Positions 1,880 to 56,574 of a stretch of 64,000 nt of DNA are shown here, one piece after another (the stretch's first letter is position 1; every line of letters starts with the position of its first letter). The DNA lies in NCBI GenBank assembly GCA_000388065.2, contig KB932204.1. One strand, 5' to 3'. The notes below the pieces were generated by a model that worked only from the letters and a program-made list of their open reading frames with translations, made no database searches and had not been told where the DNA came from. The DNA is from Fonticula alba ATCC 38817. Its lineage: Eukaryota > Protista > Nucleariida. Both the position numbers and the translations under genes were made by a program.

Positions 1880-12788
<10,909 letters not shown>

Positions 12789-13701: not shown

Positions 13702-14292
13702 TTAAGCCGAGGCGTTCATGATGGCGGCGATGATCTCACCACCGTTCTTGGCCAGAGCACGGACAGCGGTGGCGCGGTCGACACCAGCCTGCTCCATGAC
13801 CTGGGCGACATCCTCCTCGGGGAAGTCGCCAGTGATCTCCTCATCGTCGTCACCGCCGGCGGCAAGGTTGGCCTTGGCGGCGGCCTGCTGGGACTCGATC
13901 AGGGCGCGGAGCTGCTCCAGAGCCTGCTGGTTCAGGGTGTTGGGGTTCTCCATGCGGGGCTGGCCGAGGATGACGAACATGGTGGCGGAAGCCTGGTAGA
14001 TGGTCGGCTGATCGATGACGATCTGGGCACGGCGGGCGTTGGCGAACTGGACGCGCACGGTGTCGGGCAGGGGCTTCATGTTCAGCTTGTCGAAGGCCTC
14101 AACCAGGCGGGCCTGGTGGCGGGCGACGGCGTTGGCACCGGTCTCGGCGGCGTGGTCGTGCTCGCCGTGAGAGTGGCTGTGGCCGTGCTCACCGTGGGAG
14201 TGGGAGTGGCCGTGCTCGGACGACTCCTCAACGTCAGCGACGTCGACAACGTCGTGGACCTGGTCCTCAGGGACGATAGCGATGCTGGCCAT
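13702..14292 (-). CDS. NACA: Nascent polypeptide-associated complex alpha-like protein (NAC domain plus C-terminal UBA), 196 aa, single coding exon, His-rich N-terminus
   Basis: A divergent NAC barrel (KLNMKPLPDTVRV...IVIDQPTIYQASATMFVILGQPRMEN) is followed by a NAC-alpha-type UBA (EEDVAQVMEQAGVDRATAVRALAKNGGEIIAAIM). ATG at 14292, preceded by a pyrimidine tract and CAG. Confidence 0.85.
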   Translation of the reverse strand: MASIAIVPEDQVHDVVDVADVEESSEHGHSHSHGEHGHSHSHGEHDHAAETGANAVARHQARLVEAFDKLNMKPLPDTVRVQFANARRAQIVIDQPTIYQASATMFVILGQPRMENPNTLNQQALEQLRALIESQQAAAKANLAAGGDDDEEITGDFPEEDVAQVMEQAGVDRATAVRALAKNGGEIIAAIMNASA

Positions 14293-50776: not shown

Positions 50777-52890
50777 TCAGGCGACGCGTGACTGTTGGGC
50801 CGAGGGCGGGGGAGCCACCAGCGGCATCAGAGAGTCCGGGTCAAAGCCGAAAGTCGTCAAGTCCTTGCGGGTCTCCTCCGGGTCGGAAAGGGTCTGATTC
50901 AGGTAAAACTGGAGGAATCCCTCAAGTGGAAGACCGATGCTAGAAGCCCCACCGGCCGGCCGGCCGCGGGCCATCGGGACGCGGGAGCCAGAGCGACCAG
51001 CAGCAGGACCACTGCCGGTGGCCAGGGGTCGGCCATACTGCCGGAGGAGGGCCTGGCACATCATGGACAGATCGCGACTGGAAACTGGGGAGGTGCTGGC
51101 TCCGGCGGCAGTAGCCGTGCGGACGAGCGTCGAGAGCTCCATGACATCAAGGAAACCGTCGCGGTTGCGATCAAATCGCCGGAAAATGGCCTCCATGACG
51201 CCCTGCAGCATGGGAGAAAAGGTGGTCCCCGAAGCATCGAGCCAGGGAGCTGTCACAAACAATGTGTCAATGAGTGGGCTCGCACGTGTGGGGTGGGAGA
51301 GAGAGAGGCGAGACTTGGTGTATGTGCATATGTGCGTACCATCACCCGAGCCGGGTCGCGAGCAACGGTAAAGGCGGTTGCGTGCCCGGAGCGACCGGAT
51401 GTCATCCACCAGGGCACTGCCCATGGCAGGAGGCGTAGCGTTAGAGCTGGAGGCAGCCATTCCGGTGGTGGGCTCTTCATCCTCAAGCAGCCCAACCGCC
51501 TCAGCGACAGCCAGGGCGATACCGATGATCGCCTCGGCCGAGTCGTAGGCGGTGGCCATAAAGCAGATGTATGCGAGTCCATAGAGGGCAGGAATGTGAT
51601 TCGGGTAGAGATCTAGTCATGCGTGGGTGCGTATGAGAGAGAGAGAGAGGGAGGGAGGGAGGGAGGGGAGGGAGAACGTGTGAGCGTCAGTGTGAAGGGA
51701 CACCATGGATTTTTGGTTCATTGAGGGGGTCAGGGACGCGATATCTCCAGGAGGTCACGAACCAATGATGTGTAGGAGGTTCTCCGCGGCGGGCACGAGC
51801 TTTTGAATGCCTGCAGGAGAGCCAGCCTCGGCAGGATCGGCATCATCATCGGCCACGCTGGTGTGAAATTGGCGTGAGTTGTCGGGAAGAAGGTGCAAAC
51901 TACCTGAAAGAGCGGATGACGAGGGACCGGTCGACAGAGGAAGGCACACGTACGCTTCAAGCAGGGTTTGCGTGGCATTGAAAAGGTCGCAAACCTCCTG
52001 GTCGTAATTCCACCAGATCTGCGGGAGCTTGTCCTCCGGGAGCATGGCCCCATCGTGATCGACCTCCTCCCGCAGGTGTTGGGTGTATTGTTGGAAGGCC
52101 CGCCGGCGGCGACCGGCCTCGTCAGTCACACGGCGGCGATACTCCTCAAGCCAAGAGGCCGGCTCCGGTCGCGGATTGACTGGGATCGGCGGATCTGGAG
52201 ACGAGATGAATCGCGCATGGGTCAGTATGAAGGGAGGGAGGGGAGGGGGGGGGGGGGCGGATAGAAGGCGGAGACGGGCATCACCACTTGGCGGGGCTCA
52301 ACATACCAAGGTTACGCGAGGCCTCATCAAGCATCTCGAGCTCATCCTCGTCGCTGGAGCTGTGGTCATCATCGTCCTCGTCGTCCTCGCTATCCTCGTC
52401 GCTCTCGGCCATGTCCGAGGGGTCGGGATGGGCGTTTCCGGCAGCATCCCCAGTGGCATCATCGGCCAGGGAGATGGTTGCCGCGGCCGAGGTCACATCG
52501 GCCATGTCCTGGTCTTCATCCTGAGCCGGGTCCGGGAGGCCGGAGCGCAGGATGGACACCAGCTCGGACACGCTGCCAAAGGTCCCGTGGCAGATTTGGC
52601 GCCAGATTTCATTGGAGACAGACATCTGCTCCGGAGACAGGGGAGGCAGCGACGAGGTGTCCAGGCGAGCGACCTCTTCGGTAGATCCGGCAAAGATGAA
52701 CCGGTGCATCTCGCGGCTGGTCTGCGCGTGGTGGGGAGTCAGACATGATCCGGGACGGGGCTTGGCAGCGGCACGAAGCCAGTACAAGGTCACGTACCTT
52801 GGAGAGAGCCAGAATATCGGCCACCGGGTCCTCCAGGTGCGAGATGATCGCCGCCCAGGCGCCGGTTGGCAGGAGGGTGAGAGGGTGCAT
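50777..52890 (-). CDS. Putative F-box protein with an acidic tract, a TPR-like hairpin and a C-terminal EF-hand domain, ~524 aa. Exons 52890-52798, 52721-52307, 52179-51954, 51857-51763, 51612-51340, 51249-50777
   Basis: N-terminal F-box-like LTLLPTGAWAAIISHLEDPVADILALSK|TSREM. TPR-like ENLLHII|DLYPNHIPALYGLAYICFMATAYDSAEAII. EF-hand loop FDRNRDGFLDVMEL and a second helix-loop LPLEGFLQFY. Five phase-consistent introns give 1575 nt of exon. Confidence 0.7.
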
Positions 52891-53287
52891 GGCGCGGCAG
52901 GGAGGGGGGGGGGGGGGGGGTGCAAGTGTGTGTGTGTGTGCGTGTGTGAGGAGAGGAGTGCATATTGAGGAGAGGCTGGCAGTGGCCTCGCGTCGGGCTC
53001 GCTCTTCTGCCTCTCCGCGCCCCTCGTCGGTTCCTGCCGGCTTCCAGGGCGTGGGTGGGGGTCGCCCCCTCCCCCGGCCAGCCGCCTGGGCATGCAGTGT
53101 GTGTGCGTGCGCGAAAAAGAGGGAGGAAAGAAGAGCCGCATGTGCCGCGTGCGGGGGCAGATCGCGCATGGCCCGATCTGCCAACTCAAGGCTATTCTGA
53201 GGGCGGCAAAAGATATCGCGCCTGGTGGGGAATAAGCCCCCAAAGTTAATCCCACCTTCGTGGTTGCCGAACGAAGGATCTTTTTTT

Positions 53288-53443
53288 AACGTACCTACGA
53301 CTTCCACTCGGTGATCAACAAGGCCTGGTGGACGGGAGTTAGTACACACATAGCACTCCGTTGTCTGCTAACACCCGCGTCACTCTATCCAGGGTGCCGG
53401 GTCGCATATTTTTGGTGGTTGGGAGTAGACTCGTCTACTCCCG
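53288..53443 (+). ncRNA. U1: U1 spliceosomal snRNA with a variant 5' end (AACGUACCU)
   Basis: All U1 elements are present in the correct order. 5' end ACGUACCU (53289-53296). SL1 with loop GAUCAACAAG (53313-53322; 8/10 to the human U1-70K loop GAUCACGAAG). SL2 with loop AUAGCACUCC (53350-53359; 9/10 to the U1A loop AUUGCACUCC). SL3 (CACCC/GGGUG). Helix H (CGAC 53298-53301 / GUCG 53401-53404). Sm site AUUUUUG (53408-53414). SL4 GGGAGUAGA-CUCG-UCUACUCCC (53421-53442). Length ~156 nt. Confidence 0.92.
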
Positions 53444-54888
53444 CTTCCCCTTTCCATTTTAATAATTGATGTTGGTGTGAGGGGCACTTCCCGGGTGGGG
53501 ACGAGAGAGCGCCTCGCTGGACGACCTCGGCTCGTGGGCCCTCCCATCCTTGTCTCGTCCGGGCGCCCCCCCCCTCTCGCCCGTTCATACATGCTCCTGC
53601 GCGTGAACTGCCGGGAGGGGTGCATCCTGGCCGGGGTGTTTGGACCACATGGCCTGATCACATGGACCATATGCCTTTTGCCAGCGTGCCCCCTTTTTCC
53701 AGGGGGATGAGCCCCCAAGCATGCGGGCCTTCTTGGGGAGAAATTGTGCGCATGCGCTTCCAAGTCGGGGCGGTGCTCTGCGCAGAGGCGCGCATGCGTT
53801 CTCGCGTTCCGGAGCTCTTCGATCGTCGGTGCGAGGGCAGGCAGGGCGCCGTCATGTGCACGCCCCGAGGCAAGGGCGAGGTGCCCACTCTGATGCAGGG
53901 GCCCGGCGGATCCCTGGCCTCGGGCTTGGCCCCGCCGTTTTCTGCTGTTTACGCACGTGCAGTTGCCCTGTGGGAGGCCGGGCATCCCCCCTCATTCCGG
54001 CGGCCTCCTGCTTTCTCCTTCTCAGCCTGGAAGAGGTCGGGGCCAGGGAGTCGGGGGCTCTCTGTCTCCCGGTCCCGGCTCCCAGCCCACGCCTCGTTGG
54101 TGCCCGCGCCCGGGTGGCTCTGTTGCATGTGTGCATGTTCAGCATGGCCCCCGAGCACCTGGTGCCATGCATGACTTGGCGCTTGCCAAGGGCGGCTGGA
54201 GACACGTTCCCCCCCCCCCCCTCCCCGGGACATCGTGTCTAGGGTGTTGCTGGAGTCCCAGCAGCAGATGATCCCAACCCAACTGCCCTCCCTTGTGGCT
54301 CTGGGCCTATTTTGTGGGGCGCGTGCCCCCTTTGCCGCTTTACCGGGGGCAGTTTTCGCCGGGACCTGCTTCCTGTTGTGCAGTCGGACATCCTGGGCCC
54401 CCCGCTCCTCGCTGGCCCGAACCACCCTAAGCGAGGGCCGCACCCCGCTGGCGATGGAGGTGGTCCTGTGCTCGGCCATCATGGCGCGCGATCTCTCCAC
54501 TCGTCCGAATATTCCGCGCTGGGGGGGGGGGGGGGGCTGCACGGGGCCTCCTCCCGCTGCTGGGGACAGACACACCCACACCCACCCACCCACATCACCC
54601 ACGGCGGGACGCCCTGATGAAAAAACACCAGTCTCAGGCCGGCAGGGGCCCCACCTGCTCTCCCCCTCCCCCCCCCCGGTCCCTCCCTCGACTGGTACCT
54701 CCCTTCCCTTCGGAGGCATCACGCTATTTCCCTTGCCCCTTTTGCGCACACATCACACATCCACCCCTTTCGCCCTCCTTCTCCCGCTCCTTTGCCCATC
54801 CTCACCCCCTCCATCCTCCATCCTCCTTGCTCCCATCTCCGTCAAATAGCAGCACCCACTCCCCCCCCCCCCCCCCCCCGCAATCAGG

Positions 54889-56574
54889 ATGTCCAGCGTT
54901 TCCGCTCCCTCCAGCGTCCCCACCCCCACCAGTGTCGGGCTGAGCGCCACGCCGGAGTTCATGGCCATGGTGGCCCCGGCTAACTTCGTCAAGAACCTGG
55001 CTTGTGGCGGTACTGCCGGCATGGTGGGCGCCCTGGCCACCTTCCCCATCGACACGGCCAAGACCCGCATGCAGGCCGATGGTGGGCGCATGTACCGCAA
55101 CATCCCGGACGCCCTTGTGAAGATCGCCCGTCAGACTGGCCTGCGCTCCCTCTACCGCGGCCTGCCGGTCCAGCTGATTGGTATCATCCCGGAGAAGGCC
55201 CTCAAGCTGTCGGTCAACGACTCGGCCCGCTACTTCCTCCGGTACGAATCCCCCCCACTTATCCTTGGCGTGGCACTCTGCCCAACCTTCTACTTTTGTC
55301 ACAATGTGCTCTCTCTTTCCCCCTCTCGATCTCTTTCTTCTCTCTCCCCTCCCTCGACTTCCAGCACACACACACACACACACGCACTCCCACATACGCA
55401 TGCAATCCTCACTCCCCCTGTCCACATGTACCCACACACGCGCTCGCGCGCAATCACCACAGCAATCGCGAGAACAACACCATTCACTGGAGCCGCGAGA
55501 TGATTGCAGGCGCCACGGCCGGTTTCTGCCAGGTGGTCATCACCTCGCCGATGGAGATGTTCAAGATTCGTCTGCAGATGTCCGCGGCGGCGGCCGAGTC
55601 CGGTGCCGCTCCCCGGACCTCCGCCGTCAACATCATTCGCGATACCATCCGTCAGGGTGGCGTCTTCCGCGGTGCTGGCGCCACTCTCCTGCGTGATGTG
55701 ACCTTCTCCCTGCTTTACTTCCCGATGTTCGCCAACCTCAAGGGCTGGATTGCTGGCCGTGACGCCAACCACCCGGTCTGGAGCACCATGCTCCGCGACC
55801 CGGGCCCTGGTGCGTGCCTCATTTGTCTCCTCCATGCGAATTGCGGCGATGCCCATATCGAGGACTCCCCTCTTGGCGTCTGGGCCTCCGGGTTTTCCAT
55901 CTAACCTTTTCTCCCGCCCCTCTTCCTCCCCGCCTTTGGCCCGGTCTTCCTCCCTTCCTGCTCAGCTCCCGCTGGCCACACCGGCCCGCGTGACATCAAC
56001 TCGCGTGTCAACTTCTTTGGCACTTTCATGGCTGGTCTGATTTCCGGCAGTGCTGCCGGCTGGCTTGTGACTCCTGCCGATGTCATCAAGACCCGTCTCC
56101 AGGTGTGTCCTCCTCTCCTTCTCCCCCCCTCCCCCTGCCTCCCCTAAAATTTCATCTGATCTCTCGCACCACCTCGCCATTTACTGATTACCGGTCCCAT
56201 GTCCGTCCTCTACCTGCCCTATCACTCGGCTGTCTAGGCCGCTGGTGGTGTCGAGAAGTGGAAGAACATCCGCACCTGCGCCAAGATGACTCTCGCTCAG
56301 GAGGGCCCGACTGCTTTCTTCAAGGGTGCGTCCTTTTCTCAATACCCGATCACGCGCAGCCTGCCCCCCCCCCCACACACGATTACTCCTTTTCTCCTCC
56401 CTCCCCCCTCCCCCCCTGACCGTCGCTTACCTCTCCTCCCTTTTCTCGACCCAAACACACACACACACAACCATTACTTCTGCAGGCGCCACTGCTCGTG
56501 TCTTCCTGGTCGGCCCCCTCTTCGGTGTTGTCCTCATGACCTACGAGGTCCTTCCTCGCCTGCTCGGTCTCTAA
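54889..56574 (+). CDS. Mitochondrial carrier, glutamate-carrier-like (SLC25A22/18 or aspartate-glutamate carrier type), 337 aa. Exons 54889-55241, 55463-55809, 55966-56102, 56238-56325, 56486-56574
   Basis: Three carrier signature motifs: PIDTAKTRMQ, PMEMFKIRLQ and PADVIKTRLQ. The segments PEKALKLSVND and GATLLRDVTFSLLYFPMFANL resemble glutamate carriers. The exons total 1014 nt. Confidence 0.88.

What the first reader, a model, noticed from the sequence alone, without database searches (positions are those of the whole stretch)
53288..53443. U1 snRNA with a rewired 5' splice-site recognition sequence (ACGUACCU) matching this genome's GTAC/GTGC donors
Seen in the sequence: an unannotated ~156-nt segment has the full U1 architecture (70K loop, U1A loop, SL3, helix H, Sm site, YNCG-capped SL4). 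Its 5' end is ACGUACCU, the exact reverse complement of AG|GUACGU. Established knowledge: the U1 5' end is ACUUACCUG in nearly all eukaryotes studied, including budding yeast, which tolerates a mismatch at +4 of GUAUGU. U1 position 5 pairs with intron position +4. Inference: the U5-to-G change gives a Watson-Crick pair with +4C and a G-U wobble with +4U. Those are the only bases found at +4 among the 40 donors modelled here. This looks like natural compensatory co-evolution of U1 and the 5' splice-site code. I do not know of a description of this in this lineage but cannot check the literature.
Basis: partly seen in the sequence, partly recalled or inferred. Interest (0 to 1): 0.93.

Follow-up and report, generated by a model that had tools for sequence, protein, structure and literature searches.

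The report
U1 snRNA matched to +4C introns
This is a real U1 splicing-RNA gene of the amoeba Fonticula alba in which one base of the intron-recognising end has changed (U to G), so that it pairs with this genome's unusual intron starts (GT-A/G-C-G-T); the same change has already been reported in one unrelated amoeba, so it is a second, apparently independent case and not a first.

Summary
Window 53287-53444 (+) is a full-length U1 snRNA: Rfam RF00003, 64.1 bits, E 1e-13 over the whole window. That is just under the 69.5-bit gathering cut-off, which may be why it is unannotated. Its 5' arm reads AACGUACCU, so position 5 is G where the near-universal sequence has U.

An independent DNA sample with SNPs in the flanks has the same G. 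Donors that I modelled or confirmed in the window have +4 = C in 20 and U in 7 of 27. None has A. Three come from RNA contig junctions and seven from TOR homology. The G5 arm binds all 27 better than a U5 arm, with mean duplex energy -9.4 against -4.7 kcal/mol.

Not shown: expression of this locus, and whether it is the only U1 in the genome.

The record is GCA_000388065.2, which I take to be Fonticula alba (Opisthokonta). Roy and Bowser (bioRxiv 2022) reported the same ACGUAC arm with +4C donors in Mastigamoeba balamuthi (Amoebozoa). No paper in the searched library links Fonticula and U1.

A metagenome contig (L116) carries a third, very divergent U1 with the same G5, next to a gene whose four introns start GTAYGY.

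The scan had flagged this same stretch before (s1-065360).

Verdict: real; a new member of a known, rare kind.

The parts
53288..53444 (+). U1 snRNA gene, about 157 nt. The 5' end is probably A53288, since Rfam aligns from 53287.
   Evidence: RF00003 full-length match, 64.1 bits, E 1.5e-15 and 1.3e-13 window-wide.
53288..53297 (+). 5' splice-site recognition arm AACGUACCUA. G53291 stands at U1 position 5, which pairs with intron +4.
   Evidence: Sequence, Rfam alignment to AUACUUACCUG, G confirmed in independent DNA contigs of run X5.
53298..53302 (+). Helix H, 5' strand (CGACU), pairing with 53400-53404 (GGUCG).
   Evidence: Rfam structure line and minimum-energy fold.
53303..53332 (+). Stem-loop 1 with the U1-70K-type loop GAUCAACAAG (53313-53322).
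53333..53376 (+). Stem-loop 2 with the U1A-type loop motif AUAGCAC (53350-53356). Consensus is AUUGCAC, one change.
53378..53399 (+). Stem-loop 3.
53408..53415 (+). Sm site AUUUUUGG.
   Evidence: aligned to AAUUUgUGG of the model.
53421..53442 (+). Stem-loop 4, a 9-bp stem with a CUCG loop.
55242..55461 (+). Intron confirmed by an RNA contig junction, donor G|GTACGA (+4 C).
   Evidence: table 5 (X12 joint 55240>55462, cut +1). Also recovered by coding potential alone.
55810..55964 (+). Intron confirmed by an RNA contig junction, donor G|GTGCGT (+4 C).
56103..56235 (+). Intron confirmed by an RNA contig junction, donor AG|GTGTGT (+4 T).
2168..12597 (+). TOR kinase gene. Its introns have donors at 2168 GTGCGC, 2952 GTGCGC, 3602 GTATGT, 3893 GTGCGT, 4313 GTACGG, 7832 GTATGC, 11457 GTGCGT and 12141 GTGCGT.
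   Evidence: tblastn of TOR homologues P0122 and P0126 breaks at, or is contiguous across, the first seven of these places. The eighth (12141) rests on coding potential and protein context. Pfam domains.
51250..52306 (-). Minus-strand gene next to the U1. Donors at 52306 GTATGT, 51762 GTTCGT and 51339 GTACGC.
   Evidence: Model. Ends of X12 RNA contig pieces coincide with the donor at 52306 and with the acceptors at 51613 and 51250.

Best explanation
The locus is a functional-looking U1 snRNA gene of Fonticula alba. Its 5' arm carries G where nearly all eukaryotes have U (pseudouridine) at position 5. Shown: in the U1/5' splice-site helix this position faces intron position +4. The window's introns start G|GU(A/G)(C/U)G(U/C), with C at +4 in about three quarters, U in the rest, and never A. 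G5 therefore gives a Watson-Crick pair with +4C and a wobble with +4U, and roughly doubles the predicted stability of the U1/donor duplex. Inferred: this RNA is the U1 that recognises donors in this organism. The U1 arm and the genome's donor consensus have changed together, as reported for Mastigamoeba balamuthi, and independently of it, because Fonticula is an opisthokont and Mastigamoeba an amoebozoan. The order of events is unknown (donor drift first or U1 change first). So is the state of the later partner of +4, the central A of the U6 ACAGA box and its METTL16 methylation.
For: Full-length U1 covariance-model match, E 1e-13, with every U1 hallmark. G at 53291 is present in an independent DNA sample whose flanks carry SNPs. 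Donors: 3 RNA junctions, 7 supported by TOR homology, and the rest from coding potential. With no motif information at all the +4 counts are C 18, T 7, G 3, A 0 of 28; after EM they are C 22, T 6. Curated set of 27: C 20, T 7, and +5 G in 26. Duplex energy with the G5 arm is -9.39 against -4.73 kcal/mol with a U5 arm; all 27 are better, Wilcoxon p 5e-6. Independent replicate: L116 U1 (RF00003 70.0 bits, arm AUACGUACCUG) lies about 1.9 kb from a TatD gene with donors GTACGC, GTACGT, GTATGT and GTACGC. Precedent for the mechanism: the M. balamuthi ACGUAC arm with GUGCGC donors. U1 position 5 faces +4 (Parker et al. 2023). Organism: the record is GCA_000388065.2 KB932204.1. TOR is nearest to chytrid fungi and lies outside the Amoebozoa clade.
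Against: No expression evidence. There is zero depth over the U1 in the one RNA data set of this organism (X12, small and probably poly(A)-selected), and no RNA run was listed as holding it. The Rfam score is 5 bits under the gathering threshold. The U1A-loop motif has one change (AUAGCAC). Thecamonas trahens and the Mamiellales have +4C donors with a standard U1, so +4C does not require a changed U1. Most donors here are models, not RNA-verified.
Confidence: 0.78

Rival explanations
1. The locus is a minor variant or pseudogene copy of U1. The working U1 of this genome lies elsewhere and has the standard ACUUACCU arm, as in Thecamonas and the Mamiellales, which have +4C donors without a changed U1.
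For: Expression is not shown. Only 64 kb of about 31 Mb was scanned here. The score is under the Rfam gathering threshold. Physarum is reported to have both standard and modified U1 variants. Note s1-066268 hints at another U1-like sequence.
Against: Every structural and protein-binding element is intact. The covered parts of the gene are identical in a second strain whose flanks differ. The single deviation is exactly the one that fits this genome's donors. An unrelated U1 with the same change again sits near +4Y introns. Notes from 765 windows of this genome mention no other U1 gene (weak, unchecked).
Confidence: 0.12
2. The match between G5 and +4C is real but not functionally important. 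Donor +4C is set mainly by GC-biased mutation and by U6, U5 or protein contacts, and the U1 change is a tolerated, nearly neutral substitution.
For: The genome is about 65% GC. In yeasts, +4 preference tracks METTL16 and SNRNP27K (the U6 side) with an invariant U1 arm. Some +4C lineages keep a standard U1.
Against: +4G is as GC-rich as +4C and makes up 30% of background GT sites, yet it is absent from the donors. The predicted gain is about 4.7 kcal/mol per donor. The same substitution recurs in at least two or three distant lineages, each time with +4C.
Confidence: 0.08
3. The G at 53291 is a sequencing or assembly error in a standard U1.
For: The assembly dates from 2012, and the runs of 28-61 million letters look like 454 data.
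Against: Contigs of an independent 2025 DNA run (X5) cover 52957-53338 and differ only at 53075, 53221 and 53250. Several metagenomes hold 78% or more of the sampled words of the stretch.
Confidence: 0.02

Closest known systems
Mastigamoeba balamuthi U1 snRNA (Roy and Bowser, bioRxiv 2022, 10.1101/2022.06.08.495308)
   Same: Identical recognition hexamer ACGUAC (U5 to G), a genome-wide preference for C at intron +4, a GC-rich and fairly intron-rich genome, and no extended pairing beyond the standard arm.
   Different: A different supergroup (Amoebozoa, Archamoebae against Opisthokonta, Rotosphaerida), so an independent origin is likely. The reported M. balamuthi consensus is GUGCGC with +6C. 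Here +6 is U in 18 and C in 6 of 27, and +3 is A as often as G, so the perfect partner GUACGU is itself common. I could not compare the two U1 sequences, because the preprint gives its sequence only in a figure.
Entamoeba U1 snRNA (same preprint)
   Same: A natural compensatory change of the U1 arm that matches an atypical genome-wide donor.
   Different: Two changes (ACAAAC for GUUUGU) plus extended pairing, in AT-rich, intron-poor parasites. Here there is one change in a GC-rich free-living organism.
Standard U1 snRNA (Rfam RF00003; human, yeast)
   Same: Overall architecture: 5' arm, four-way junction with SL1-3 and helix H, 70K and U1A loops, Sm site, SL4. Arm positions 3, 4 and 6-10 are unchanged.
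   Different: G where the standard has U (pseudouridine) at position 5, A for U at position 2 and A for G at position 11. ACUUACC was invariant in 236 Saccharomycotina and outgroup genomes even where +4 switched from A to U.
+4C lineages without compensation (Thecamonas trahens, Mamiellales)
   Same: Donor preference for C at +4 (GYGCGY-like).
   Different: Their single strong U1 candidates keep ACUUAC. Fonticula does not.

Membership tests
U1 spliceosomal snRNA (RF00003) | Significant full-length match to the U1 covariance model | tested here: met
   64.1 bits, E 1.5e-15 and 1.3e-13, model 1-166 of 166. This is 5.4 bits below Rfam's curated gathering score, so not a hit by Rfam's own rule.
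U1 spliceosomal snRNA (RF00003) | Single-stranded 5' arm complementary to the organism's 5' splice sites | tested here: met
   AACGUACCU against the donor consensus G|GU(A/G)CGU. Mean 7.3 pairs in register and mean -9.4 kcal/mol over 27 donors.
U1 spliceosomal snRNA (RF00003) | SL1 loop for U1-70K (AUCACGAAG-like) and SL2 loop for U1A (AUUGCAC) | tested here: met
   GAUCAACAAG and AUAGCAC are aligned to those loops with high posterior. The U1A motif has one change. Protein binding itself was not tested.
U1 spliceosomal snRNA (RF00003) | Sm site between helix H and a 3' terminal stem-loop | tested here: met
   AUUUUUGG at 53408-53415, followed by the 9-bp SL4.
U1 spliceosomal snRNA (RF00003) | Expressed, capped, Sm-bound small RNA | tested here: inconclusive
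   No depth in the X12 RNA contigs, the organism-B RNA runs do not contain this organism, and no RNA run was listed as holding the stretch. The available RNA data are probably poly(A)-selected, so absence says little.
Co-evolved U1 arm and donor code (the Mastigamoeba/Entamoeba type) | The U1 arm deviates from ACUUAC at the position facing the deviant donor base, restoring a pair | tested here: met
   G5 faces +4 C (20) or U (7); no +4 A or G in 27 donors.
Co-evolved U1 arm and donor code (the Mastigamoeba/Entamoeba type) | The deviant U1 is the only or the major U1 of the genome | not testable with these tools
   Only this 64-kb window can be scanned, and no tool here searches the whole assembly. 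Other readers' notes list no second U1 gene, but they are unchecked.
Co-evolved U1 arm and donor code (the Mastigamoeba/Entamoeba type) | The donor preference holds genome-wide | tested here: inconclusive
   Met within this window (27 donors). More than 15 first-stage notes from other pieces of the genome report the same GTRCGY pattern, but I did not check them.

The most novel reading that the evidence does not exclude
The same U-to-G change at U1 position 5 arose independently at least twice, and perhaps three times: in Fonticula (Opisthokonta), in Mastigamoeba (Amoebozoa), and in the unidentified eukaryote behind metagenome contig L116. Each time it came with a switch of intron +4 to C, while other +4C lineages kept the standard U1. 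That would make G5/+4C a recurrent, reachable alternative state of the splice-site code. It would also make Fonticula, a culturable relative of fungi, a place to ask whether U6 (the ACAGA box and METTL16 methylation) changed too, and in what order.
Probability: 0.5. Interest if true: 0.7.

Novelty: new member of a known kind. Interest (0 to 1): 0.55.

Why it matters
The U1 5' arm is one of the most invariant RNA sequences in eukaryotes. It stayed unchanged in 236 yeast genomes even where the donor consensus shifted. Natural exceptions are very few: Entamoeba, Mastigamoeba and, partly, Physarum, all Amoebozoa. A case in Fonticula would be the first outside Amoebozoa and in the sister lineage of fungi. 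It would use the same substitution as Mastigamoeba, which argues that the U1/donor code can shift repeatedly along the same path. It also explains why standard annotation misses this gene, since the score falls under the Rfam threshold. Finally, it gives a concrete prediction to test on U6 and METTL16, which contact the same intron position later in splicing.

Tried and rejected
- The Rfam scan at gathering thresholds returned nothing. Only the E-value mode shows the U1.
- Laying reads of two large RNA runs labelled 'organism B' (X16, X17) was uninformative. They touch only poly-G and poly-C stretches, so they do not contain this organism.
- The hope that run X12's 8% word share reflected U1 expression was wrong. 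X12 covers the neighbouring exons, not the U1.
- A second run search with the U1 alone listed no RNA holder.
All but L116 look like chance matches.
- My first EM donor model, with tight windows around the coding segments, was noisy and missed two RNA-confirmed introns. It was replaced by a model that adds coding potential.
- Plain hexamer counts are only mildly informative: GTACGT 3.6x and GTGCGT 1.9x over expectation.
- I looked for hidden in-frame introns at four homology gaps inside TOR exons. No GTRYG donor lies there, so they are probably lineage-specific insertions.
- A putative 56-nt intron or frameshift at 8754-8809 in TOR stays unresolved and was left out of the donor set.
- The Acanthamoeba and Mastigamoeba hypotheses for the organism were rejected.
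- Full-text searches for the sequence strings themselves returned only noise.
- L116's organism could not be identified, because the length limits of the protein search exclude full-length relatives of its short exons.
- The M. balamuthi U1 sequence is given only in a figure, so no direct alignment was possible.

Full report
**1. What is at 53288-53443**

The default Rfam scan of the window found nothing at gathering thresholds. In E-value mode, one match stands far above noise: RF00003 (U1) at 53287-53444 on the + strand. It covers the whole model (1-166) and scores 64.1 bits, with E 1.5e-15 on 701 nt and 1.3e-13 over the whole window on both strands.

The gathering score is 69.5. The gene therefore falls just under Rfam's curated line, which would explain why it is unannotated. 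No tRNA and no other Rfam family is present.

The alignment and the single-sequence fold show each U1 element:
- helix H: 53298-53302 pairing with 53400-53404
- SL1 with loop GAUCAACAAG
- SL2 with AUAGCAC, one change from the U1A motif AUUGCAC
- SL3
- Sm site AUUUUUGG at 53408-53415
- a 9-bp SL4 closed by CUCG

**2. The 5' arm**

The DNA reads ...ctttttttAACGTACCTACG.... Aligned to AUACUUACCUGG, the arm is (U)AACGUACCUA. Position 5 is G (53291) where the consensus has U, position 2 is A for U, and position 11 is A for G.

The G is not an assembly error. Contigs of an independent DNA run (X5, 2025, another sample) cover 52957-53338 and 53350-54119. They differ from the window only at 53075, 53221, 53250 and 54003, all outside the U1.

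**3. The donors**

(a) RNA evidence. Contigs of run X12, from the same organism label as the source DNA, give three exact junctions in the gene downstream of the U1:
- 55242-55461, G|GTACGA
- 55810-55964, G|GTGCGT
- 56103-56235, AG|GTGTGT

The ends of X12 pieces also coincide with the donor at 52306 (GTATGT) and the acceptors at 51613 and 51250 of the upstream minus-strand gene.

(b) Homology evidence. The window holds a TOR kinase gene (Pfam). tblastn of two TOR homologues breaks at, or runs contiguously across, seven introns. Their donors are 2168 GTGCGC, 2952 GTGCGC, 3602 GTATGT, 3893 GTGCGT, 4313 GTACGG, 7832 GTATGC and 11457 GTGCGT.

(c) Ab initio evidence. I trained a codon log-odds score on the long exons, took 28 gaps between well-scoring same-strand segments, and listed all frame-compatible GT...AG pairs.
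- Choosing by coding potential alone, with no motif information, gave +4 = C 18, T 7, G 3, A 0 and +5 G in 20 of 28.
- After EM the counts were C 22 and T 6 at +4, and +5 G in 25 of 28.
- The 325 candidate GT sites have +4 C 36%, G 30%, T 20%, A 13%.
- The model recovered the RNA-confirmed intron 55242-55461 exactly.

The curated set of 27 donors has -1 G in 21, +3 A 12 / G 12, +4 C 20 / T 7, +5 G 26, and +6 T 18 / C 6. More than fifteen first-stage notes from other pieces of the genome report the same pattern. I cite them as unchecked leads only.

**4. Does G5 matter for pairing**

For each of the 27 donors I computed the duplex minimum free energy with the window's arm and with the same arm carrying U at position 5. 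The mean is -9.39 against -4.73 kcal/mol. All 27 donors are better with G, Wilcoxon p 5e-6. In register, G5 adds a G-C pair in 20 donors and a G-U pair in 7.

That U1 position 5 faces intron +4 is established knowledge and is restated in Parker et al. 2023.

**5. Organism**

- The best named hits of ribosomal protein uL5 are aphelid, zoopagalean and mucoralean fungi and animals.
- The best named hits of TOR are chytrid fungi at 52-53% identity, with dictyostelids at 47%.
- In a quick ML tree the window's TOR joins two unnamed environmental sequences, outside a 100%-supported Amoebozoa clade and a 99%-supported fungal clade. It sits on a long branch, so this needs caution.
- The NAC protein encoded at 13705-14292 (-) is found verbatim on NCBI record GCA_000388065.2 KB932204.1, 3.07 Mb. 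From memory this is the Fonticula alba ATCC 38817 assembly, and follow-up agents on other windows of the genome also name Fonticula alba.

So the genome is not Mastigamoeba. Fonticula is Opisthokonta, Rotosphaerida; Mastigamoeba is Amoebozoa, Archamoebae.

**6. What is known**

Roy and Bowser (bioRxiv 2022) searched for U1 genes with a covariance model neutralised at the arm. They report:
- ACAAAC in five Entamoeba species, matching GUUUGU donors
- 'a third variant, ACGUAC' in Mastigamoeba balamuthi, whose EST-supported donors prefer GUGCGC
- a standard arm in Thecamonas trahens and five Mamiellales despite +4C donors
- a standard arm in 69-70 Saccharomycotina
- Physarum as a mixed case

Parker et al. 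(eLife 2023) found ACUUACC invariant in 236 genomes. They linked the A/U preference at +4 to METTL16 and SNRNP27K, that is, to the U6 side.

The preprint does not mention Fonticula or nucleariids. No paper in the searched library holds both 'Fonticula' and 'U1 snRNA'. The phenomenon, and even the exact substitution, are therefore already described. Its presence in Fonticula, outside Amoebozoa, seems not to be.

**7. A further case found on the way**

L116 (Ga0209915_1004554) 1638-1803 scores 70.0 bits, above gathering, with arm AUACGUACCUG. Apart from the universal motifs, it is not alignable with the window's U1.

About 1.9 kb downstream lies a TatD-type gene. Its four exons are ordered by their Pfam profile coordinates. 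They are separated by introns that begin GTACGC (3702), GTACGT (4167), GTATGT (4431) and GTACGC (4659). This is an independent co-occurrence of G5 with +4 C/U. I could not identify the organism.

**8. What is not shown**

- Expression. X12 has zero depth over the U1. It is a small data set and probably poly(A)-selected. The large RNA runs offered belong to another organism and touch only homopolymer stretches. A run search with the U1 alone listed no holder.
- Uniqueness. I could scan only this window. A note from another window (s1-066268) mentions a possible U1-derived sequence elsewhere.
- The U6 side. The ACAGA box and METTL16 of this genome could not be reached with these tools.

**9. Verdict**

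The mechanistic reading is well supported by computation but lacks expression data. The novelty claim must be lowered: this is a new, probably independent member of a rare but already described kind of U1/donor co-evolution.

Confidence that the locus is a genuine U1 with G5 is about 0.95. Confidence that it is the working U1, co-adapted to +4C/U donors, is about 0.78.

Noticed in passing
L116:1638-1803 (+) and L116:3428-4800 (+): Metagenome contig Ga0209915_1004554 carries a very divergent U1 (RF00003 70.0 bits) with the same G5 arm, AUACGUACCUG. A TatD-like gene about 1.9 kb downstream has four introns starting GTACGC, GTACGT, GTATGT and GTACGC. Three tRNA genes lie upstream. The organism is unknown.
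   Followed up: partly
window 8754-8809 (+): Inside the TOR gene the reading frame changes between 8759 and 8771. Either there is an unusually short 56-nt intron (donor GTTCGA) or a frameshift in the assembly. The TOR homologue alignments overlap by about 48 residues here.
   Followed up: partly
window 4528-4877, 6238-6500, 7105-7505, 9337-9584 (+): Four stretches inside long TOR exons have no counterpart in TOR homologues and contain no GTRYG donor. They are probably lineage-specific low-complexity insertions. My TOR model (about 2,980 aa) is longer than the annotated product (2,771 aa).
   Followed up: partly
window 12200-12597 (+): The last TOR intron (457 nt) contains a very long C-rich tract that translates as a run of proline. 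Similar poly-C and poly-G tracts at 52232-52257, 54208-54226 and 54855-54879 attract reads from unrelated RNA runs.
   Followed up: no
window, whole: The hexamer GTGTGT occurs 173 times against 16 expected, which points to (GT)n microsatellites. At least one N is present in the window.
   Followed up: no
P0121, P0122: Two unnamed TOR proteins from Logan assemblies are the closest relatives of the window's TOR (57-58% identity) and group with it in the tree. They may come from uncultured nucleariid-like organisms and could lead to relatives whose U1 arm could be read.
   Followed up: no
window 53075, 53221, 53250, 54003: These are SNPs between the assembly and the DNA of run X5 (labelled as another organism, depth about 3-6x). 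A second strain of this amoeba seems to be a low-level passenger in those 2025 samples, and near-identical DNA also turns up in soil, sludge, sediment and dust metagenomes.
   Followed up: no
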